DNA of 63,414 nt, filler included, from Octopus bimaculoides (taxonomy: Eukaryota), in the NCBI RefSeq assembly GCF_001194135.2. It is 5 parts of 4 records of this genome, joined end to end, with 100 filler letters (N's around TTAATTAATTAA, not from the genome) between each part and the next. Parts side by side here need not be neighbours in the genome. Positions count along the whole stretch, not along the records: positions 42,114 to 49,864 come from NC_068984.1; 4 more parts are not named here. One strand, 5' to 3'. The translations under genes and the position numbers were made by a program. Shown here in pieces: positions 5,802 through 49,765 of the stretch; within the stretch, counting starts at the first letter, position 1, and each line of letters begins with the position of its first letter. The notes below the pieces were generated by a model. The model had not been told where the DNA came from, ran no database searches, and saw only the letters and a list, made by a program, of their open reading frames with translations.

Positions 5802-5902
5802 TGTACCTGATGAAACTCAGACTGAAAATTAGATGCAACGCATGTTGAATGGAGTCCCACCCGTAAGGGGCAGTAGCAGAATGGGTCGAAACGACCTGTA
5901 CA
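5802..5902 (+). ncRNA. Type I hammerhead ribozyme-like motif (right arm copy)
   Basis: TGTAC-CTGATGA(5807-5813)-AACTCA...TGGGTC-GAAA(5888-5891)-CGACCT-GTACA. Stems I and II pair, but the cleavage triplet is degenerate. Confidence 0.45.
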
Positions 5903-6366
5903 AGATAAAGATTAATACTAAATCAATTTTCTGGTTACTTGATCAATTATCATTTTATACACACACACAAACACACACACATACATACACGCGCGAACGC
6001 ACACGCGCGCACGCACACGCGCACACACGCACACACGCACACACGCACAAACATTAATGTGCATTTATGAAACATGTTGTGTATCCCTGAAAACTGCTGA
6101 AATATTGTCAGGGATCGTTTATGGGTGTAAACCCCGGTACCTGAGCATATTTCGGCTCGTCTGCTAATATTCTTTCTATAAAAGCAATTTTTAGAACAGC
6201 AGTCAAAAAAAGATAGTTTGCGATATAGCCCCACATCCCTTATAACGTACATTTTCGTAAATCAACGAATATGAAACCAGTTAAGTATACAATCACGCGC
6301 ACAGATACAAACACGAAGAGACATACATACGCACACACGCGCGCGCACACGCACAAACATACATAG

Positions 6367-6406
<40 letters not shown>

Positions 6407-6791
6407 GTGTTTGTGTGTGTGTACGTGTATCATGAAGTATTGTCTCATATTTATAAATGTTTTTTGATTGTATATTAATAAAATCCAAACAAATCCAAGT
6501 TATGAAAATAATGCTAGTTAAGAGTATTACCAGATACTTCACTATTACGGAGTCAGGACCCCTTCTGGAAATATATCAAGCAATCAGTGGATACCAGCTT
6601 TTGTCCACAAGTTTGTTTTTTTTTGACAGTGGGCCTAAACCAGATATAAGGAAATATCTGATAATAACATCAACCAGTTTTATATGCATAACGTGCCGGC
6701 ATTGCTTTGGCTTTTAAAGCAAAAGAATCAAAAATAGTCACAGGTGCATATACATATATATCCTTGTGTGTGTATATATATATATATACAT

Positions 6792-6824
<33 letters not shown>

Positions 6825-9082
6825 NNNNNNNNNNNNNNNNNNNNNNNNNNNNNNNNNNNNNNNNNNNNNNNNNNNNNNNNNNNNNNNNNNNNNNNNNNNN
6901 NNNNNNNNNNNNNNNNNNNNNNNNNNNNNNNNNNNNNNNNNNNNNNNNNNNNNNNNNNNNNNNNNNNNNNNNNNNNNNNNNNNNNNNNNNNNNNNNNNNN
7001 NNNNNNNNNNNNNNNNNNNNNNNNNNNNNNNNNNNNNNNNNNNNNNNNNNNNNNNNNNNNNNNNNNNNNNNNNNNNNNNNNNNNNNNNNNNNNNNNNNNN
7101 NNNNNNNNNNNNNNNNNNNNNNNNNNNNNNNNNNNNNNNNNNNNNNNNNNNNNNNNNNNNNNNNNNNNNNNNNNNNNNNNNNNNNNNNNNNNNNNNNNNN
7201 NNNNNNNNNNNNNNNNNNNNNNNNNNNNNNNNNNNNNNNNNNNNNNNNNNNNNNNNNNNNNNNNNNNNNNNNNNNNNNNNNNNNNNNNNNNNNNNNNNNN
7301 NNNNNNNNNNNNNNNNNNNNNNNNNNNNNNNNNNNNNNNNNNNNNNNNNNNNNNNNNNNNNNNNNNNNNNNNNNNNNNNNNNNNNNNNNNNNNNNNNNNN
7401 NNNNNNNNNNNNNNNNNNNNNNNNNNNNNNNNNNNNNNNNNNNNNNNNNNNNNNNNNNNNNNNNNNNNNNNNNNNNNNNNNNNNNNNNNNNNNNNNNNNN
7501 NNNNNNNNNNNNNNNNNNNNNNNNNNNNNNNNNNNNNNNNNNNNNNNNNNNNNNNNNNNNNNNNNNNNNNNNNNNNNNNNNNNNNNNNNNNNNNNNNNNN
7601 TATATAAATATATGCATATATCCCTACATATATGTACATACCTACATATATATGTATACATACATGCAAATATGGGTACAGGATATCACAAAAACGTTAA
7701 ACACAATGAGAAACGAAAACAGAAAACGAACTTTTTTTTGAACAACGAAAAAAAAAACATCAAGAATATTTCCCTTCATCAGTTGTCCCTTCTTCACATG
7801 CACACAGCGCTTTTCTGAATAAATGCCTAAGTAATCATCTAGATAAGTTAAGGTTTTCAGATAAGGAAATCAACCACCGAAATCGTACATTTCAAATACA
7901 ATCGGTAAATTGAACAGGAATAATATGCAAGACTTTTCTCAAATTTAAAATGTGATGTTCTTTTTGTTATCTACATTTCAATGACCGAAGTTTGTTTCTC
8001 TGTTAGAGACCAGATCCATTCTCAGAAGAACAATTGAAATAATTGAAACCGGAAGAGAATATAAATGCTTCTCTCCATCGATACGTACATAGGGATTGAT
8101 ATAGATGTATAATGCGTGATATATATATATATATATATATACGGTTAAACCTTGGGAGAGGCACTATGCCGGTAATAAACGCACGCACTGGTTCAGTCCG
8201 TTATCAATTTATAAACAGTATTTACATTCAAAATAAATGGAAGTGGAGAGACAAGTTACTGAAGAGATTNNNNNNNNNNACACACGAAATAATTTAGTTT
8301 ATCGTTTTTCGTTTTTTTTTGTTTTTTTTGTTAAATCATTTCATTGCACTCTTGCAATCTCTTCAATAACTTGTCTCTCCACTTCCATTTGTTTTATTTT
8401 GATGTATGATTTAGTGTTGTTTTGAAATTGTCCGGTATGAGCATGTGAGTGTGTGCACGTTCGTATGTGTGGACGCTCGTATGTGTGCACTCACGTATGT
8501 GTTCGTTCTTATATGTAAGTATGTGCGTTCATATGTGTGTTTGTTAGATTTCATTCATATCAGATAGGTTAGAGACTTTGGACTTGGTTTTGGTTTCCTT
8601 TCTGTTATTTTCTGTTTTCTTCGTAAATGCATCTTTTTTTTTTATTTATGCTCACGTTCTGTATTTTATATGTGAACAACGTCTGCATCCATGGGTAATT
8701 GTAAGGATTTTATCTACGTGTACTTGTTATTCAAAATTGGTCGTGTTTCCGTTACGAGGACTGACTCTTGTATTTGCTGTAACGATGCGTCATTAGGGTG
8801 TCTAGACAGGATTTCTATGCTAATCAGGTCCGGTACACCACCATGTTGTTCTTTTGCATCTTGTTATGTTTTGACGGTGCAACGTACAAATTGGTGTTTA
8901 CTTTGTAAAAACAGATACCCCTTGAATATTACGTACGACTATCATCCACTTTTCCTCTTTTTACCCTCTTTTCCTTCCTTCTCGTTCCCTCTCTGTCTCT
9001 CCTTTTCTTCCTTTCTATCTCTGTCTCTCTAACTCTCTCGTGCTCGCATTTCTTCCTTAATCCTTCCTCCTCTGTCTCTCCA

Positions 9083-9420
9083 TACCTATGGAGTAAAGTA
9101 CAGAAATTCTCCCTCAATACTAACGTGCGAGCTTCATTATATGGGGGTCAATGTGCGAAAAAGTTTTCAACCTGTCTCCTCCAATTAGGAAATGGGAAAG
9201 TACCATTTGACGGGAATTGTGATATCTGTTTGGCTCATATTTCTATCATGGGGAATTCCCCAGCTGAAGTGAAGAACAGGGTCTTTCTTGATGCTCCTGG
9301 TGACACAGGTAAAACATTTAGAACATTGCTTCTCTACAAAGTAAGGGAAAAAAAAAAATTGCAGTTGCTGTACCATTGTCTGGCTTCACTGTCACCATTC
9401 TCCCAGGATGACGAACAGCT
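9083..9420 (+). mobile_element. Helitron Rep/Hel (PIF1-family helicase) pseudogene fragment, rearranged
   Basis: Translates to YLWSKVQKFSLNTNVRA...FSTCLLQLGNGKVP... (Helitron LW..V..L.TNMR / LL.IGNG block), then VFLDAPGDTGKTF (Walker A). After a frameshift in an A run it reads IAVAVPLSGFTVTILPG*RTA (cf. IALAVASSGIAATLLPGGRTAH). Confidence 0.85.
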
Positions 9421-9609
9421 GTCACAATTGAATTCAGAACTGATTTCCCAACAAAAGAATAAAGTGTATCCCAATTGAAGAATACATTGATTTTAGAATA
9501 ATAAATTTCTATACAACATATTTTGCTTTTTTCTCCTAACATGTAAGGAAAAATTTAATTCTGAGGCAACACCGGTTGCCTCTGCTAGTATATATATAAA
9601 TATATATAT

Positions 9610-10204
9610 AAGCAATAATAAATCCATGAACGAGGTATAAACAGTAGCTGCACGACATCGTGAAGTATATTTGCCACTTAAATGTAGCTAACCCTTAAGG
9701 GTGGATGCTACTGTAGTTTGTATCCCCAGGAGGACACCTCCTCCAGCTGCCTATTGACACACTTTCTGTGACCTATCAGTATTTGCAAAGGGAAGTCATC
9801 CTTCCCATCTTCAACCTGACGTGATACACACGGATTCGAGTTTCTGGCTATTAACCCGTCATCAGCGAGTGACAATCACCGGTTGTCGATGTGAAGTGGT
9901 TCCCAATGCAAATATATATATCCTTTTTCCTGTGACGAAAAGTCACTCATCTCGAAAAAGTGTAAACAAGCAATAATAAATCTCTGAACGAGGTATAGAC
10001 AGTAGCTGCACGACATCGTGAAGTATATTTGCCACTTAAATGTGGCTAACCCTTAAGGGTGGATGCTACTGTAGCTTGTATCCCTAGGAGGACAACTCTT
10101 TCAGCTGGGTTTTGACACACTTTCTGTGCCCTATCAGTATTTGCAAAGGGAAGCCATCCTTCTCATTTTCAACCTGACGTGATACACACAGACCCGAGTT
10201 TCTG
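9610..10204 (-). mobile_element. 237-bp direct repeat pair (9610-9846, 9968-10204; period 358 bp), Penelope-like pLTR or retrozyme-like
   Basis: The two copies align without gaps, about 20 substitutions by hand count. A hammerhead core spans the junction of copy 1 and the spacer on the minus strand. Confidence 0.7.
9827..9871 (-). ncRNA. Minimal type I hammerhead ribozyme-like motif
   Basis: Minus strand: CACTCG-CTGATGA-CGGGTTAATAGCCA-GAAA-C-TCGA-ATC-CGTGTG. Stem I pairs 5/6. The second copy reads GAAAC-TCGG-GTC, so the consensus is GAAAC-TCGA-GTC (palindromic loop III, GUC site). Confidence 0.6.
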
Positions 10205-10819
10205 TACACAGAGTTCATGAAGTCAGATAAGGTGAGACTGATTCGTTCAAGCAGCAACATGTCACTAACATCCCGTGTATATTTTACTAACACCACAATG
10301 TAGGTATAATTATCTTAATGCAAACGACGTTCTACAACAATAATATACTTAGCGATTTATGTGCACACGCGCGCACACACACACATACACACACACATTA
10401 GGTCAAAGTATAGGTGTGGGGTTATGTGGGTATATGTGAGTATGTGTTTCTATGCAAAACATTAATTCTGCACTGGCGTCCCGCTCTGTTTCAGGATAAG
10501 AAGTCTGTAGCATTGTGCGTGTTGTTTGTCCATTTCGTAGTTGTTTCTATTTACTAAATGCTTGTATATATCTTTGTTTTCTATCTGTCTATGAATTACT
10601 ACGCACGCACATACACATGCATTCACATTACACGCACATAGAAATACATATAAGCACATATACTTACATATAAAAAGTATTTCTCAGTAAAGTGTAACAC
10701 GTCATATATACTGGAGGCAGTTACATTGCTAAAATGAAGATATGCAAAAGCTCTCAGATACTCGCAGCTTCATTCACACGTACACATGCTTACACTATGT
10801 ATTGATATATGAACCTTAA

Positions 10820-42215: not shown

Positions 42216-42411
42216 CATTTTTTAACGCACTCTAAATTTGATAAATAAATAAATAAATGCATAAAAAGCTATTTATCGAAGTATTATTCTTGTTATTGTT
42301 CCAACTACACATTCAATGACCAATGTATATAGGGGTTTCCTATAAGGTTGTTATCTACCCCTGATTGGAACTCTCCTGTATGACATGTACGCATGCTCAG
42401 TGACTTGCTTT

Positions 42412-42423
42412 AACTTCCGCAGA
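42412..42423 (+). promoter_or_regulatory. AACTTCCGCAGA motif (ETS-like core) upstream of the THAP ATG
   Basis: Exact 12-mer mirrored at 43553-43564 on the minus strand; 33 nt before the ATG at 42457. Confidence 0.45.
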
Positions 42424-42456
42424 GTAACGACTCACATGCTGTACTGACCGTTTAAT

Positions 42457-42723
42457 ATGTTTCCAAAGAAATCACGTAAATACTGCTGTATATGCAGCCA
42501 CTATAGAAGGAAGAATGTAGACGGCAAAGTTATTTCACTACATAGATATCCTGCAAACGTAGCTATTCGTCGTATTTGGCTTCAGAGATCGAGACTTGTG
42601 AGGAAAGACTTTGTTTACACTGCAAATAGCCAAATGTGTTCCCAGCATTTCGTCAATTTTAATGGACCATCGAAAGATCACCCCTTGCCATCCGTTTTTC
42701 CCAAAAAAGTATTTAAAATATCA
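42457..42723 (+). CDS. THAP-type (C2CH) zinc-finger DNA-binding domain, first coding exon
   Basis: MFPKKSRKYCCICSHY...SLHRYP...RRIWL...MCSQHF...LPSVF has the THAP hallmarks (N-terminal Cys pair, S-x-H-R-F/Y-P, W, CSxHF, PS/TxF). Consensus donor TCA|GTAAGT at 42724; unspliced, the frame stops at 42735. Confidence 0.88.
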
Positions 42724-43285
42724 GTAAGTGCATGATCATATACGCAGTTAGTAGATGAGTGAAATGTCTCTTTGATTTATCTCCTCATTAAAAGATTAGA
42801 ACATGTTAAAATTCAAGTGGTGTACGTTGTGCTAAACACGAATGTTTAATCTAATAATTGTTGTGTTGATGTACAGGTATTTTTAATAAAGAATTTTGCA
42901 TTCAAATAATAAATACATTGAAATTGTTGTTAATGTTCTGAATGAATGTGGGAATTTCCAGTAAGCCTAGCTATGATATGTTTCTTTATATATATATATA
43001 TATTAATAAGGGTAGAAATTGATATTAATCAATTAGAACCAGTGGTCTAGCATATTAAAAAAATCCGAAGATTAAAATTATATTACATACAAAAATAAGA
43101 GGAATGACCAGCAAAAGTGGACTCCTATATGCTAGAAATAGATGCCGATTCGGCATTTATTTCTAGCATATAGGAGTCCACTTTTGCTGGTCANNNNNNN
43201 NNNGAATCTAATATTCCTCTAATTATTAGACTTTATAGTGTGACTGTCCCTACCTCTTCTACACCTCATCATGCTCATGGCCAAA

Positions 43286-43517
43286 TCAGTGAATGGTTGC
43301 TGAAAGCAGATTGAGATCAGGCAATACTTCACCGGGAGGAGATATAAGCTTCTGCTTATTCCTGTCTGAAGTATCGTCCGATACTTCAGACTTATCGCCC
43401 GATGAATTTACTTTGTTGACATTCTTCATCGACAGAAATTTTATACCATTCAACCTTTCAGTCAAGTCCGCCTTTAAGTACTTCGATAGCTGAATCATCG
43501 AGCTGCTTTATATCCAT
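43286..43517 (-). pseudogene. Decayed second ORF of the TIR element, convergent with THAP
   Basis: ATG at 43517 gives MDIKQLDDSAIEVLKGGLD*KVEWYKISVDEECQQSK...; another frame continues KQKLISPPGEVLPDLNLL. Its start lies 35 nt after the mirrored motif. Product identity not established. Confidence 0.45.
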
Positions 43518-43552
43518 GATAAGACGTAAAACAATAACAATAGCGTGGATAG

Positions 43553-43564
43553 TCTGCGGAAGTT
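43553..43564 (-). promoter_or_regulatory. AACTTCCGCAGA motif upstream of the minus-strand ORF
   Basis: Plus strand tctgcggaagtt is the reverse complement of 42412-42423. Confidence 0.45.
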
Positions 43565-43689
43565 TAATTGTCTACATGGAGCGCCGCCTAGCCAAGGGAG
43601 ATAACCTAGTTATAGGAAAGCCCTATAGATCAGCTATCACAGTAGGCGTTGAGTTACAGAAATTAATACAAAGTTTCTACTGTTTATCA

Positions 43690-43726
43690 TCATGTTCGTC
43701 ATTATCACCATCGACATCGTCATCAC

Positions 43727-43792
<66 letters not shown>

Positions 43793-43797
43793 TATTT
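43690..43797. repeat. (CAT)n/(TAT)n array
   Basis: Direct. Confidence 0.9.
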
Positions 43798-45464
43798 TAT
43801 CTAAAGCTTGACATTTATCTGCTACCCAATACGTTTGAGACATTTAAGAGGTTAACCCGGAGAGATGACGACTAAGACGAATTTGAAATGGGTGTGACGG
43901 ACTTTTCCTCTGCAGATTCTCATTTCGCTTTAAGCCAACCTAAAAATACAGTTTAAATGTTATAGTAGCATCGATGCACAGCTTAAATATTCTCTCTCTT
44001 ATGACATAGCCCTAGCATAATGCTTATGTTTGTAGGTGTGAGTGTGCGCACGCGTTTGTGTGTATGTGTACGCGCGCGCGTCTTTGCGCTCGTGTGGTCT
44101 AAGATTGAATATGTCATTACGTCAATTTAAACCTGTTATTTATGCTATAGTTTTGCTTAACGGTATTAGGTTGAAATATTAGAAATAGCTCACAATAAAA
44201 TGCTTCTTACCTGTTTACAAATTATTATTTGATTTAATGGGAATAGTTGACATTACTGTGTCTACAATATATTAGAAATAATTTGATTCGTTCAAACGAT
44301 CTCATTTATGAGAAAAATACGATAATTAGATTTAATTATTGTAGGGTAGGGTTTTAATGCATCAAAATTGTGCTTTTGATCTCGGCGCTATTCCGAGCAT
44401 TGGATCAACTTTAAACAACCAGTTATAGATCTAAAATCTGGATGTAATTTACTATTATAACAGTAGAGTAAGTTCAAAGTCATCGAATCGAAACTAATAG
44501 CACATGATTAATTTCATGTAAAGTGTATCGGATTTAGGAAGCATTTTGAGTTTTGGAGCTATCCTAGACGCCAAGTCATTCATAAAAGTTGAAGGTTGTA
44601 TGTAATATGATATAGCATTCAGCTCGGAGCATTGAAAACGCGGGGCCAGTAGCGTATGGCTAATCTTGCTGCTAGATTAATATGTACTGATTCCAACGTA
44701 GACTTGGTCTTAGATTTGGTGGATCGCATTATTTACAATAACGTCTGTTAATCTCTACTCAGTTTTTTTTTTGTTTTTTTTTTTGCTATATTCCTGGTCT
44801 CCTCTAAGTCGTTTACTGTTTCATGCAATGCATGCCGTTAATGTTTACTGAAACGTTTACTGCCGTTAATGTTTACTGAAAGACAGGTATGTAACAGGTA
44901 TGTGACTGGCTGATGCCTCAAAATAGTCTGTCTAGGTAGTGTTAGTAGAAGCTCTACTATTCATCCTAAGCTTCTCTTTCTGTTGTCGCATTACTAAATG
45001 CGTTTTNNNNNNNNNNNNNNNNNNNNNNNNNNNNNNNNNNNNNNNNNNNNNNNNNNNNNNNNNNNNNNNNNNNNNNNNNNNNNNNNNNNNNNNNNNNNNN
45101 NNNNNNNNNNNNNNNNNNNNNNNNNNNNNNNNNNNNNNNNNNNNNNNNNNNNNNNNNNNNNNNNNNNNNNNNNNNNNNNNNNNNNNNNNNNNNNNNNNNN
45201 NNNNNNNNNNNNNNNNNNNNNNNNNNNNNNNNNNNNNNNNNNNNNNNNNNNNNNNNNNNNNNNNNNNNNNNNNNNNNNNNNNNNNNNNNNNNNNNNNNNN
45301 NNNNNNNNNNNNNNNNNNNNNNNNNNNNNNNNNNNNNNNNNNNNNNNNNNNNNNNNNNNNNNNNNNNNNNNNNNNNNNNNNNNNNNNNNNNNNNNNNNNN
45401 NNNNNNNNNNNNNNNNNNNNNNNNNNNNNNNNNNNNNNNNNNNNNNNNNNNNNNNNNNNNNNNN

Positions 45465-45498
<34 letters not shown>

Positions 45499-47772: not shown

Positions 47773-48149
47773 ATGGCTAGAATACTTTTGATCATAGGTT
47801 TGCTAGATCATAGGTTTGATTATAGGTCATAAGTTTGATCATAGGTCATGGCTAAAATAAAATACCTTTGATCATAGGTTTGCTAGATCATGGGTTTGAT
47901 CATAGGTCATAGGTTTGATCATAGGTCATAGGTTTGATCATAGGTCATAGGTTTGATCATAGGTCATAGGTTTGATCATAGGTCATAGGTTTGATCATAG
48001 GTCATAGGTTTGATCATAGGTCATGGCTAAAATACCTTTGATCATAGGTTTGCTAGATCATAGGTTTGATCATAGGTCATAGGTTTGATCATAGGTCATA
48101 GGTTTGATCATAAGTCATGGCTAGAATACCTTTGATCATAGGTTTGCTC
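47773..48149. repeat. Hierarchical minisatellite built from TCATAGG
   Basis: The 7-mer TCATAGG and 12-mer TCATAGGTTTGA form a 19-bp unit. A header atggcta(g/a)aatac(c/t)tttgatcataggtttgct recurs four times. Confidence 0.95.
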
Positions 48150-49018: not shown

Positions 49019-49621
49019 CGTTTTCGAGATGTATTTGGTTTTAATTAATTTCTTCGATAAATATGTATTTGATTCCAAATTTGTCTTTAGATTTTCGTCC
49101 ACCACCTTTTCTTTTTAGATATGATAATTTTAGTTTTCAAGCATACCCCTAAACACACACACACGCACACACAATATGATACACACACAAACACACACAC
49201 ACACACATACGCACGCACAATACACCCACACAAACATTTACAATTACACAACCAAATTACGGAATTAATCATTAAAAATTCTCCATGCTAAATACAGTAA
49301 ATTCCTTTTCTAGATCTCCCAATGTTTCAGTAGACTGATTCCAAACCGAGATGAAACGAATAATCACTGTGAGGCATTAAATTGCTCAACTGCATCAATA
49401 AAATGTGTACTCAACAATTAATTTGTATAGAGTTCTCTGTATCTTAGAAGAAGTAGTATCAAGTACAGCTTACCCGTTTTGTGTGTGTGCGTGTTGAAAG
49501 GCTAATACCTGAATCCAACTATTTCTTATCATTCCCTCTGCGTTAGCTATCTTCAACTTGTCTATTTGTCCGTTATGTTGTATTTTAGTTAAGAGACCTT
49601 AATTGCCGCACATTTATTTAT

Positions 49622-49710
<89 letters not shown>

Positions 49711-49721
49711 TAGATAGATAA

Positions 49722-49765
<44 letters not shown>

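What the first reader, a model, noticed from the sequence alone, without database searches (positions are those of the whole stretch)
42331..43624. Compact TIR transposon carrying an intact THAP zinc finger and a convergent second gene
Seen: 15-bp termini matching 14/15 (AGGGGTTTCCTATAA / AGGGCTTTCCTATAA), AT/TA flanks, an uninterrupted 89-codon THAP exon with a GTAAGT donor, and an opposite-facing decayed ORF. Known: ISL2EU elements (PIF/Harbinger relatives) encode a THAP+DDE transposase plus a YqaJ-like exonuclease and make 2-bp AT duplications. P elements (CA..TG ends, 8-bp TSD) and Kolobok (TTAA TSD) fit these ends poorly. Inference: an internally deleted ISL2EU-like element whose DNA-binding module survives, possibly an undescribed cephalopod family or a domestication intermediate.
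Basis: partly seen in the sequence, partly recalled or inferred. Interest (0 to 1): 0.72.

Follow-up and report, generated by a model that had tools for sequence, protein, structure and literature searches.

The report
Deleted ISL2EU transposon copy in octopus
This is an ordinary dead-end copy of a known kind of jumping gene (ISL2EU) in an octopus genome: it keeps both ends and the first, DNA-binding piece of each of its two genes but has lost the enzymes, so it cannot move by itself.

Summary
Window 42331-43624 is bounded by imperfect inverted ends (15-mers match 14/15; 29-32 nt at about 80%) with AT on both flanks. It carries an intact 89-codon THAP exon with a GTAAGT donor and a broken ORF on the opposite strand.

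Full-length relatives in bivalves have homologous ends. They encode a THAP+HTH+DDE_Tnp_4 transposase and a convergent SAP+SWIM+YqaJ protein, which is the ISL2EU layout. The octopus copy keeps about 400 bp of the left end and about 320 bp of the right end. The right part is the first roughly 85 codons of ORF2, a SAP motif that is itself deleted and frameshifted here. Nothing remains of the DDE or YqaJ regions.

The N gap lies in the non-coding interior and no reading frame crosses it. Its true length, and so the element's length, is unknown.

At least five THAP-only and three SAP-only gene models in Octopus bimaculoides are sister copies. They show neutral decay, including loss of zinc ligands, so domestication is not supported.

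A 2-bp AT or TA duplication fits. TTAA and 3-, 4- and 8-bp duplications do not.

Verdict: a new member of a known kind, of low interest.

The parts
42329..42330 (.). Left flanking AT, one copy of the putative 2-bp target-site duplication. The alternative register is TA at 42330-42331 with the inverted repeat starting at GGG.
   Evidence: All five elements examined (octopus, L001, L002, L004, L005) fit AT+AGGG or TA+GGG. Duplications of 3, 4 or 8 bp and TTAA do not fit.
42331..42359 (+). Left terminal inverted repeat (AGGGGTTTCCTATAA GGTTGTTATCTACC)
   Evidence: (pair I2) and the alignment with the termini of bivalve elements.
42360..42456 (+). Left subterminal region and 5' leader of the transposase gene. 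It carries conserved blocks GGAACTCT (42367-42374) and AACTTCCGCAG (42412-42422), the latter about 35 bp upstream of the ATG. It is probably a promoter or transposase-binding region (inferred).
   Evidence: I3; 66% identity to Sinanodonta, against 40% at third codon positions. Searches show that another octopus copy (P0129) contains this region.
42457..42723 (+). Exon 1 of the ISL2EU transposase gene: an intact 89-codon THAP zinc finger
   Evidence: It is 71-72% identical to the N-terminus of Sinanodonta transposases.
42724..42729 (+). GTAAGT splice donor of intron 1, at the same codon as in the bivalve elements
   Evidence: Exon 1 ends at codon 88-98 in L002-L005 and is followed by an intron of 470-3,700 bp.
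42730..43306 (.). Non-coding interior (29% GC left of the gap). It is intron-1 remnant and/or filler that replaces about 3.3 kb of a full-length element. It contains the palindrome 43105-43193 and the assembly gap 43194-43203.
   Evidence: no DDE, HTH, SWIM or YqaJ homology anywhere in the piece.
43307..43517 (-). Remnant of exon 1 of the second ISL2EU gene, the N-terminal SAP-motif region. The ancestral ATG is at 43517. Codons 1-14 are read in one frame (43517-43476) and codons about 34-87 in another (to 43307). The SAP core (residues about 15-33) is deleted with a frameshift. Homology ends at ...GEVLPDL.
   Evidence: searches (P0005-7, 63-70% identity; P0005 against intact Sinanodonta ORF2, 42.5% over 80 aa, E 2e-17), (SAP PF02037).
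43518..43595 (-). Right subterminal region and 5' leader of the second gene, with the conserved block AACTTCCGCAG (reverse complement of 43554-43564) about 36 bp upstream of the ancestral ATG
   Evidence: (I3).
43596..43624 (-). Right terminal inverted repeat (reverse complement AGGGCTTTCCTATAA CTAGGTTATCTCCC)
43625..43626 (.). Right flanking AT, the second copy of the putative 2-bp duplication

Best explanation
Window 42331-43624 is one copy of a non-autonomous, internally deleted ISL2EU transposon. ISL2EU belongs to the PIF/Harbinger-ISL2EU-Spy ('PHIS') group of cut-and-paste DNA transposons. The copy sits in an octopus genome.

The parent element, as seen intact in bivalves, is about 4.3-4.6 kb in Sinanodonta. 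Each end carries an inverted repeat plus a conserved region of about 100 bp. From each of these regions one gene is transcribed inwards. From the left comes a transposase: THAP zinc finger as exon 1, then a helix-turn-helix and an IS5/Harbinger-type DDE nuclease. From the right comes a second protein with a SAP motif, a SWIM-like finger and a YqaJ (lambda-exonuclease-like) nuclease.

In this copy a deletion removed everything between intron 1 of the transposase gene and about codon 85 of the second gene. What remains is the two ends, the THAP exon (still open) and the SAP exon (further broken by a deletion and frameshift).

Shown: the homology of both ends and both exons to full-length elements, the loss of all catalytic parts from the assembled sequence, and the existence of several sister copies in Octopus bimaculoides.

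Inferred: the copy was spread in trans by a full-length element's transposase, which binds the conserved termini and cuts and pastes with a 2-bp AT-type duplication. The conserved AACTTCCGCGG block about 35 bp upstream of each ATG is a promoter element. The open THAP frame reflects the copy's youth (3 differences in 89 residues from the family consensus), not selection.
For: Ends and subterminal inverted repeats.

THAP.

Full-length relatives. L002 (Sinanodonta, 5883-10446, 4,564 bp) encodes a 507-aa THAP+HTH_Tnp_4+DDE_Tnp_4 protein and a convergent 565-aa SAP+YqaJ protein. L001 is a degenerate copy with the same parts: DDE_Tnp_4 E 1.8e-29, HTH_Tnp_4 E 8.9e-11, YqaJ E 2.1e-13 and a sub-threshold SWIM match at E 0.007. 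The same two-gene layout is present in Saccostrea, Argopecten and Pecten.

DNA homology of the octopus ends to L001: 403 bp at 68% (E 6e-34) and 49 bp at 75.5% (E 1e-4). An eight-terminus alignment shows shared blocks.

The intron after the THAP exon lies at the same codon in all the bivalve elements.

The minus-strand ORF is the N-terminus of ORF2.

No trace of DDE, HTH, SWIM or YqaJ in the whole 7.7-kb piece.

Multi-copy in O. bimaculoides: P0001, P0002, P0004, P0128 and P0129 (THAP-only, 82-96% identity) and P0005-7 (SAP-only). P0129 includes the translated left subterminal region at 22/25 identity. P0001, P0004 and P0128 run into the same intron-encoded ...ISVSA/ISVTA tail.

Literature: ISL2EU is defined by an AT duplication, a THAP+HTH+DDE transposase, a YqaJ second ORF and an autonomous length of about 4.8 kb. 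Non-autonomous families of 0.7-1.5 kb are listed, and four families are known in the oyster Crassostrea gigas (PMC4482050 text and Table S2; PMC4122938; PMC9179366).
Against: The interior is interrupted by an assembly gap of unknown true length, so the size of the deletion, and strictly its existence on the left side, is not proven for this copy.

No full-length octopus element was found. No named octopus protein appears among the best 120 DDE hits, and no long protein more than 70% identical to the THAP exon appears among 1.84 billion representatives. The source of transposase in octopus is therefore unknown and may be extinct.

The duplication cannot be fixed without an empty site. The flanks read T-AT|AGGG, not the A-AT|GG pattern reported as typical for ISL2EU.

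Placement of the transposase lineage within curated ISL2EU (Repbase) was not testable.
Confidence: 0.88

Rival explanations
1. The copy is not internally deleted. The 10-N gap hides the missing 3 kb (transposase exon 2 and most of the second gene), so this is a full-length or near full-length ISL2EU element that the assembler collapsed.
For: The gap length is only an estimate (program note). The 470 bp between the THAP donor and the gap is about as long as intron 1 in Sinanodonta, Saccostrea and Argopecten (470-514 bp), so nothing on the left side proves a breakpoint. A palindrome at the contig end signals assembly trouble.
Against: On the right side, homology to the second gene stops at codon 85 or so (43307). 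The next 104 bp up to the gap are closed in all frames. In intact Sinanodonta ORF2 the same exon runs on for about 100 more codons without an intron. Three O. bimaculoides gene models end at the same point...LPDLK plus a short unrelated tail. All octopus THAP and SAP models are short single-exon proteins of 86-112 aa.
Confidence: 0.07
2. The THAP exon is kept for a host or element function. It could be a domesticated THAP gene, or a truncated DNA-binding peptide that titrates transposase sites, as the KP repressor of the Drosophila P element does.
For: The 89-codon frame and all zinc ligands are intact in this copy. The conserved upstream block that may serve as a promoter is retained. The deletion derivative keeps exactly the DNA-binding first exons of both genes. 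The KP precedent is from general knowledge and was not tested here.
Against: Sister copies have lost ligands or the N-terminus: C61Y and a duplication in P0002, CxxC lost in P0004, an N-terminal deletion in P0001 and P0129. This copy itself has three private replacements, S2F, G18R and N83K, at positions where the octopus copies that cover them agree; G18 and N83 are also shared with the Sinanodonta, Saccostrea and Argopecten transposases in that alignment. The partner SAP exon is destroyed. The inverted ends are still present, so the locus looks like a plain insertion. With only about 3% amino-acid divergence, an open 89-codon frame is expected by chance.
Confidence: 0.04
3. It belongs to another THAP-bearing transposon superfamily (P element or Kolobok), or the inverted 15-mers flank an ordinary host THAP gene by chance.
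For: THAP domains also occur in P and Kolobok transposases and in many host genes (general knowledge; Kolobok in molluscs, PMC9587614, listed).
Against: The closest full-length relatives of this THAP exon all carry HTH_Tnp_4+DDE_Tnp_4 and sit next to a YqaJ gene. The flanks are neither TTAA nor an 8-bp repeat. Both termini are homologous to the termini of those elements. The exon is multi-copy.
Confidence: 0.01

Closest known systems
ISL2EU transposons (PHIS / Harbinger-like superfamily), for example the Crassostrea gigas families ISL2EU-8, -10, -11 and -15_CGi listed by Han et al. 2015 (PMC4482050, Table S2)
   Same: The relatives that share this element's termini have the defining two-gene layout: a THAP+HTH_Tnp_4+DDE_Tnp_4 transposase of about 510 aa and a convergent YqaJ protein of about 570 aa, in an element of 4.3-4.6 kb in Sinanodonta. 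They occur only in animals, insert in AT-rich targets, and their flanks fit a 2-bp AT duplication. Short non-autonomous derivatives of 0.7-1.5 kb are known in the group.
   Different: This copy has no DDE and no YqaJ. Its flanks read T-AT|AGGG rather than the reported typical A-AT|GG. The N-terminal SAP motif and SWIM-like finger of the second protein are not mentioned in the three papers read. No cephalopod ISL2EU was found in the searchable literature.
Full-length elements in the freshwater mussel Sinanodonta woodiana (L002 intact, L001 degenerate; assembly GCA_046254885.1)
   Same: The THAP exon is 71-72% identical, the intron lies at the same codon, and the left 126-bp non-coding end is 66% identical. 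They share the blocks AGGGCWTTCCWATAA, GGTTRTCT.CCC, GGAACTCT and AACTTCCGCGG, and the N-terminus of the second gene is homologous.
   Different: The host is in a different mollusc class. Synonymous sites are saturated (pS 0.87-0.90), so this is an old relationship and not a recent transfer. The mussel elements are full length.
KP and other internally deleted P elements of Drosophila (general knowledge)
   Same: An internal deletion derivative of a THAP-bearing cut-and-paste transposon that retains both ends and an open reading frame for the THAP DNA-binding domain.
   Different: It belongs to a different superfamily (P transposase, 8-bp duplication). KP also keeps a dimerisation region and has demonstrated repressor activity. 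Nothing of the kind is shown here, and the sister copies decay.
PIF/Harbinger proper and Spy (the other PHIS groups)
   Same: A related IS5-type DDE_Tnp_4 catalytic domain in the full-length relatives, and AT-rich targets.
   Different: Harbinger has a 3-bp TWA duplication and a Myb/SANT second protein. Spy has no duplication, an AAATTT target, a single ORF and no THAP (PMC4122938). None of these fits.

Membership tests
ISL2EU (as a non-autonomous member) | Termini homologous to those of an autonomous two-gene ISL2EU element | tested here: met
   blastn to L001: left 403 bp at 68%, E 6e-34; right 49 bp at 75.5%, E 1e-4. Alignment of eight termini from octopus, Sinanodonta (two elements) and Saccostrea. 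The homology is cross-species only; no autonomous octopus element was available.
ISL2EU | Transposase with an N-terminal THAP, an HTH and an IS5/Harbinger-type DDE (DDE_Tnp_4) | tested here: inconclusive
   In this copy only the THAP exon survives. The DDE and HTH are absent from the assembled sequence, as expected for a deletion derivative. They are present in every full-length relative of the THAP exon.
ISL2EU | Second, convergent ORF encoding a YqaJ-type exonuclease | tested here: inconclusive
   This copy retains only the N-terminal SAP exon of that ORF, homologous to intact Sinanodonta ORF2 (E 2e-17 through paralog P0005). The YqaJ part is absent here and present in the relatives.
ISL2EU | 2-bp target-site duplication, typically AT | tested here: inconclusive
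   AT lies directly outside AGGG...CCCT at both ends in the octopus and in L001, L002, L004 and L005. The register TA+GGG fits equally well because the flanks are palindromic. No empty site could be obtained.
ISL2EU | Inverted repeats usually start with GG (Han et al. 2015) | tested here: inconclusive
   The ends read AGGGG / AGGGC. GG comes first only under the TA register.
ISL2EU | Transposase falls in the ISL2EU clade in a DDE phylogeny with curated references | not testable with these tools
   No Repbase or Dfam sequences are available, and this copy has no DDE.
P element | 8-bp duplication, CATGATG... 31-bp ends, P-type transposase after the THAP | tested here: not met
   The 8-bp flanks ATGTATAT and ATAGATCA differ. 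The relatives carry DDE_Tnp_4, not a P transposase.
Kolobok | TTAA target duplication | tested here: not met
   The flanks are ...ATAT and ATAG....
PIF/Harbinger proper | 3-bp TWA duplication and a Myb/SANT second ORF | tested here: not met
   The 3-bp flanks TAT and ATA (or ATA and TAT) are not direct repeats. The second ORF of the relatives is SAP+YqaJ.
Spy | No duplication, insertion in AAA|TTT, single ORF without THAP | tested here: not met
   The flanks are TATAT and ATAGA. The relatives have two ORFs and a THAP. Absence of a duplication itself could not be tested.
THAP zinc finger (Pfam PF05485) | C-x2-4-C-x35-53-C-x2-H ligands with conserved P, W, F and P, and a score above the Pfam cut-off | tested here: met
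   31.9 bits against a 23.9-bit cut-off. C10/C13/C61/H64, P32, W41, F65 and P78 are present. Model pLDDT is 87, with THAP2 and THAP1 as the top, weak, fold matches.

The most novel reading that the evidence does not exclude
The amplified deletion derivatives, which keep exactly the two DNA-binding first exons (THAP and SAP) behind their conserved leader regions, are not just debris. They would produce short DNA-binding peptides that occupy the element's termini and damp ISL2EU transposition in octopus, a KP-like self-repression system. This copy, with its intact THAP frame, would be one of the active producers.
Probability: 0.05. Interest if true: 0.5.

Novelty: new member of a known kind. Interest (0 to 1): 0.22.

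Why it matters
It matters mainly for annotation. At least eight Octopus bimaculoides gene models named 'THAP-type domain-containing protein' or 'SAP domain-containing protein' (86-112 aa) are first exons of decayed ISL2EU copies, not host genes. They inflate counts of THAP and SAP genes in cephalopods.

Two modest biological points follow. First, the lineage spans bivalves, gastropods and cephalopods. About 100 bp of non-coding sequence at each end is held more tightly than synonymous sites (66% against 40% identity). This marks the cis-acting region to test for THAP binding and promoter activity. Second, the ISL2EU second protein carries an N-terminal SAP motif and a SWIM-like finger in front of YqaJ. 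That gives a handle on a protein whose role in transposition is still unknown (PMC4482050).

None of this changes what is known about the kind of element.

Tried and rejected
(1) Recent horizontal transfer between octopus and mussel, suggested by 71% protein and 68% DNA identity. Rejected: synonymous sites are saturated (pS 0.87-0.90, third-position identity 39-40%, dN 0.19). Many bivalve and gastropod transposases are similarly related.

(2) Fetching other octopus copies. P0001, P0004, P0005 and the window's own 92-aa ORF are 'not on record' for contigs. A metagenome scan with the THAP exon found no relative (one search was a machine error).

(3) Looking for an octopus autonomous partner. No named octopus protein is among the best 120 of 426 DDE hits. 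No long protein more than 70% identical to the THAP exon is among 172 representative hits. This is absence of evidence only, because transposon genes are often masked before annotation.

(4) Fixing the duplication from more elements (L002, L004, L005). This excluded 3-bp and 4-bp duplications and the outer TA register, but it cannot separate AT+AGGG from TA+GGG.

(5) Remains of DDE, HTH, SWIM or YqaJ in the octopus piece, searched by tblastn with all Sinanodonta frames. None found.

(6) A shuffle test for inverted 15-mer pairs. It was uninformative because microsatellites inflate the count. The argument against chance rests on cross-species homology instead.

(7) Other ORFs in the piece have no Pfam family. 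No second copy or solo end of the element is present in the piece.

(8) Sequence and fold searches of solved structures gave only weak THAP1/2/11 matches. These are consistent with THAP but add little to Pfam.
Full report
**What is there**

The piece was read directly.

- **Termini.** AGGGGTTTCCTATAA lies at 42331-42345. The reverse complement of 43610-43624 is AGGGCTTTCCTATAA, a 14/15 match. The repeat finder extends this pair to 32 nt at 81% (42328-42359 / 43596-43627). It also reports a second inverted pair further in, 42409-42431 / 43545-43567.
- **Flanks.** They read TGTATAT|AGGGG and GCCCT|ATAGATC.
- **THAP ORF.** The only long plus-strand ORF inside is 42457-42735. Its first 89 codons are followed by GTAAGT. 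They score above the Pfam cut-off for THAP (E 2.3e-7). All four zinc ligands and the conserved P, W, F and P are present.
- **Structure.** A model built on 30 relatives has pLDDT 87. Its best matches among solved structures are the THAP domains of THAP2 and THAP1, though weakly.

**The assembly gap**

The ten Ns at 43194-43203 lie in an AT-rich (29% GC) stretch that is closed in all three frames on both sides. The THAP exon ends 471 bp before the gap. The minus-strand ORF stops 83 bp after it. No ORF crosses it, so being in frame is not at issue.

Continuity and real length could not be tested, because no other octopus DNA could be reached. A palindrome with 44-nt arms (43/44 complementary, 43105-43193) ends exactly at the gap. 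It is either a true fold-back that stopped the assembler or a contig-end artefact. The element's length of 1,294 bp is nominal.

**What it is related to**

A search with the THAP exon returned four proteins. Three are short 'THAP-type domain-containing proteins' of Octopus bimaculoides, 82-88% identical. The fourth is a protein of the freshwater mussel Sinanodonta woodiana, 71% identical.

The mussel locus (L001) holds a 4.3-kb element.

- Its ends are (T/A)GGGCATTCCAATA..., visibly the same as the octopus ends.
- Its plus strand carries the THAP exon, then pieces that match HTH_Tnp_4 (E 8.9e-11) and DDE_Tnp_4 (E 1.8e-29).
- Its minus strand carries a SWIM-like finger (below the Pfam cut-off) and a YqaJ nuclease domain (E 2.1e-13).

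A second mussel copy (L002, 5883-10446, 4,564 bp) is intact. It encodes a 507-aa THAP+HTH+DDE protein and a convergent 565-aa protein with SAP and YqaJ. The same pair of genes is found in Saccostrea, Argopecten and Pecten. A search with the mussel transposase found 426 relatives at E <= 1e-10; those of the listed best 120 that carry a species name are all bivalves or gastropods.

This is the published architecture of ISL2EU elements: an AT duplication, a THAP+HTH+DDE transposase, a YqaJ second ORF, an autonomous length of about 4.8 kb, and occurrence in animals only. Four families are already listed for the oyster Crassostrea gigas, and non-autonomous families of 746-1,483 bp are listed elsewhere (PMC4482050 text and Table S2; PMC4122938; PMC9179366).

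**How the octopus copy maps onto a full-length element**

By blastn, 42328-42730 aligns to the left 394 bp of L001 at 68% (E 6e-34). 43580-43628 aligns to its right end at 75.5% (E 1e-4). Translated searches with every frame of the mussel element find the THAP exon and nothing else in the whole 7.7-kb piece.

The splice donor sits at the same codon as in all four bivalve genes. In those genes exon 1 is the THAP domain and is followed by an intron of 470-3,700 bp.

The minus-strand ORF (43498-43286) matches three O. bimaculoides 'SAP domain-containing proteins' at 63-70% identity. One of them, P0005, aligns to the N-terminus of the intact mussel second protein at 42.5% over 80 residues (E 2e-17). 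That N-terminus passes the Pfam SAP cut-off. The 'second gene' is therefore the first exon of the ISL2EU second protein.

In the window copy this exon is broken.

- Residues 1-14 are read from the ancestral ATG at 43517 in one frame.
- Residues about 34-87 are read in another frame.
- The SAP core between them is missing.
- Homology ends at ...GEVLPDL (43307). In the mussel the same exon continues for about 100 more codons.

The copy thus keeps about 400 bp on the left and about 320 bp on the right of a parent of about 4.5 kb.

**Is it one of a family, and is the THAP exon under selection?**

Cluster look-ups add two more octopus THAP models (P0128, P0129). P0001, P0004 and P0128 all run from the exon into the same intron-encoded tail (ISVSA/ISVTA), as the window ORF does. 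P0129 starts inside the translated left subterminal region and matches it at 22/25. The repeated unit therefore reaches to within 18 bp of the left end. The three SAP models share the same end point.

The family is multi-copy and the copies share the truncated structure. They also decay.

- P0002 has an internal duplication and C61Y.
- P0004 has lost the CxxC.
- P0001 and P0129 have an N-terminal deletion.

The window copy differs from the octopus consensus at three residues: S2F, G18R and N83K. An open 89-codon frame at that divergence needs no selection. Domestication is therefore not supported.

**Old lineage, constrained ends**

Between octopus and mussel the THAP exon has dN 0.19, but its synonymous sites are saturated (pS 0.87-0.90; third positions 39-40% identical). 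This rules out a recent transfer.

Yet the 126-bp non-coding left end is 66% identical. An alignment of eight termini from three species shows shared blocks:

- the terminal AGGGCWTTCCWATAA;
- GGTTRTCT.CCC;
- GGAACTCT;
- AACTTCCGCGG.

The last block lies 34-36 bp upstream of the start codon of each inward-facing gene, at different distances from the two termini. That points to a promoter or leader element. The core ACTTCCG resembles an ETS-type site; this is my inference from general knowledge and is untested. The terminal blocks are the likely transposase-binding sites, which is also inferred.

**Target-site duplication**

In the octopus and in L001, L002, L004 and L005 the sequence outside AGGG...CCCT is AT at both ends. 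Because the flanks are palindromic (TAT|A...T|ATA), TA+GGG fits equally well.

The Argopecten element has asymmetric flanks (CTATAT|AG... and, on the other strand, GACAAT|AG...). It excludes 3-bp and 4-bp duplications and an outer TA register. TTAA and 8-bp duplications are excluded in the octopus itself. A 2-bp A/T duplication is what ISL2EU makes. The exact register needs an empty site.

**Mechanism**

- **Shown:** homology of both ends and both first exons to two-gene ISL2EU elements, loss of all catalytic parts from the assembled copy, and several sister copies.
- **Inferred:** the parent's transposase binds the conserved ends through its THAP (and HTH) and cuts and pastes with a 2-bp duplication. 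This deletion derivative was moved in trans. It is now inert unless a source of transposase survives in the genome.

No such source was seen, but transposon genes are often masked before annotation.

**Rivals**

- The main rival (about 7%) is that the gap hides the missing interior. The right-hand breakpoint inside ORF2 exon 1 and the uniformly short octopus gene models argue against it.
- A KP-like repressor or domesticated THAP gene (about 4-5%) is contradicted by the decay of the sister copies.
- P element, Kolobok, Harbinger proper, Spy and a chance inverted repeat are excluded by the tests in the membership table.

**Verdict**

This is a non-autonomous ISL2EU copy, a new member of a known kind. 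Its practical value is mainly for cleaning up cephalopod gene annotation, with minor leads on ISL2EU cis-elements and on the domain make-up of the second protein.

Noticed in passing
window 43105-43193: An almost perfect palindrome (44-nt arms, 43/44 complementary, 1-nt centre) ends exactly at the 10-N gap. A weaker inverted match (43091-43105 / 43213-227, 13/15) continues on the far side of the gap. It is either a real fold-back or a contig-end artefact.
   Followed up: partly
window 43364-43391: A perfect 13-nt-arm palindrome (GTCTGAAGTATCG / CGATACTTCAGAC) sits inside the SAP-exon remnant and encodes ...SEVSDDTSD.... It keeps both strands open, which explains the mirror ORF 43293-43493 (+). 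Paralog P0007 lacks part of this stretch.
   Followed up: partly
window 43728-43800: An (ATT)25 microsatellite lies about 100 bp to the right of the element. The poly-Leu and poly-Ile ORFs listed there (43516-43875 +, 43637-43843 -) are artefacts of it.
   Followed up: no
window 47792-48148: A minisatellite with a 19-bp unit (TCATAGGTTTGATCATAGG, about 13 copies) and higher-order periods of 94 and 170 bp.
   Followed up: no
window 45007-45497, 49153-49236, 49622-49765: A second assembly gap of 458 N is bordered by (TG)16. There are also (AC)n and (ATAG)36 microsatellites. None of the ORFs in 45.9-49.1 kb has a Pfam match.
   Followed up: partly
L006 (Logan SRR14492784 contig, 4,271 bp): A relative of the Saccostrea-type element carries both genes and a recognisable left end, but its transposase gene is intron-less (147-1718 translates straight to the 523-aa P0012). 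In every genomic bivalve copy examined an intron follows the THAP exon.
   Followed up: no
P0111 (ENA, 530 aa; no locus fetched): A transposase relative in which a SAP motif sits on the transposase itself, N-terminal to THAP+HTH+DDE, instead of on the second protein. The two DNA-binding modules appear to be shuffled within the group.
   Followed up: no
L001 9884-14216 versus L002 5883-10446: Two Sinanodonta copies of the same family. L002 is intact. L001 has in-frame stops in both genes. THAP-exon dS between them is 0.053 and dN 0.015, which suggests fairly recent activity in the mussel.
   Followed up: partly
L001/L002 termini (TATAGGGCATTCC): The terminal GGGCA of the mussel inverted repeat equals the core of the human THAP1 recognition motif as I recall it (TxxGGGCA). 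The octopus ends read GGGGT / GGGCT. This is recalled from memory and was not tested.
   Followed up: no
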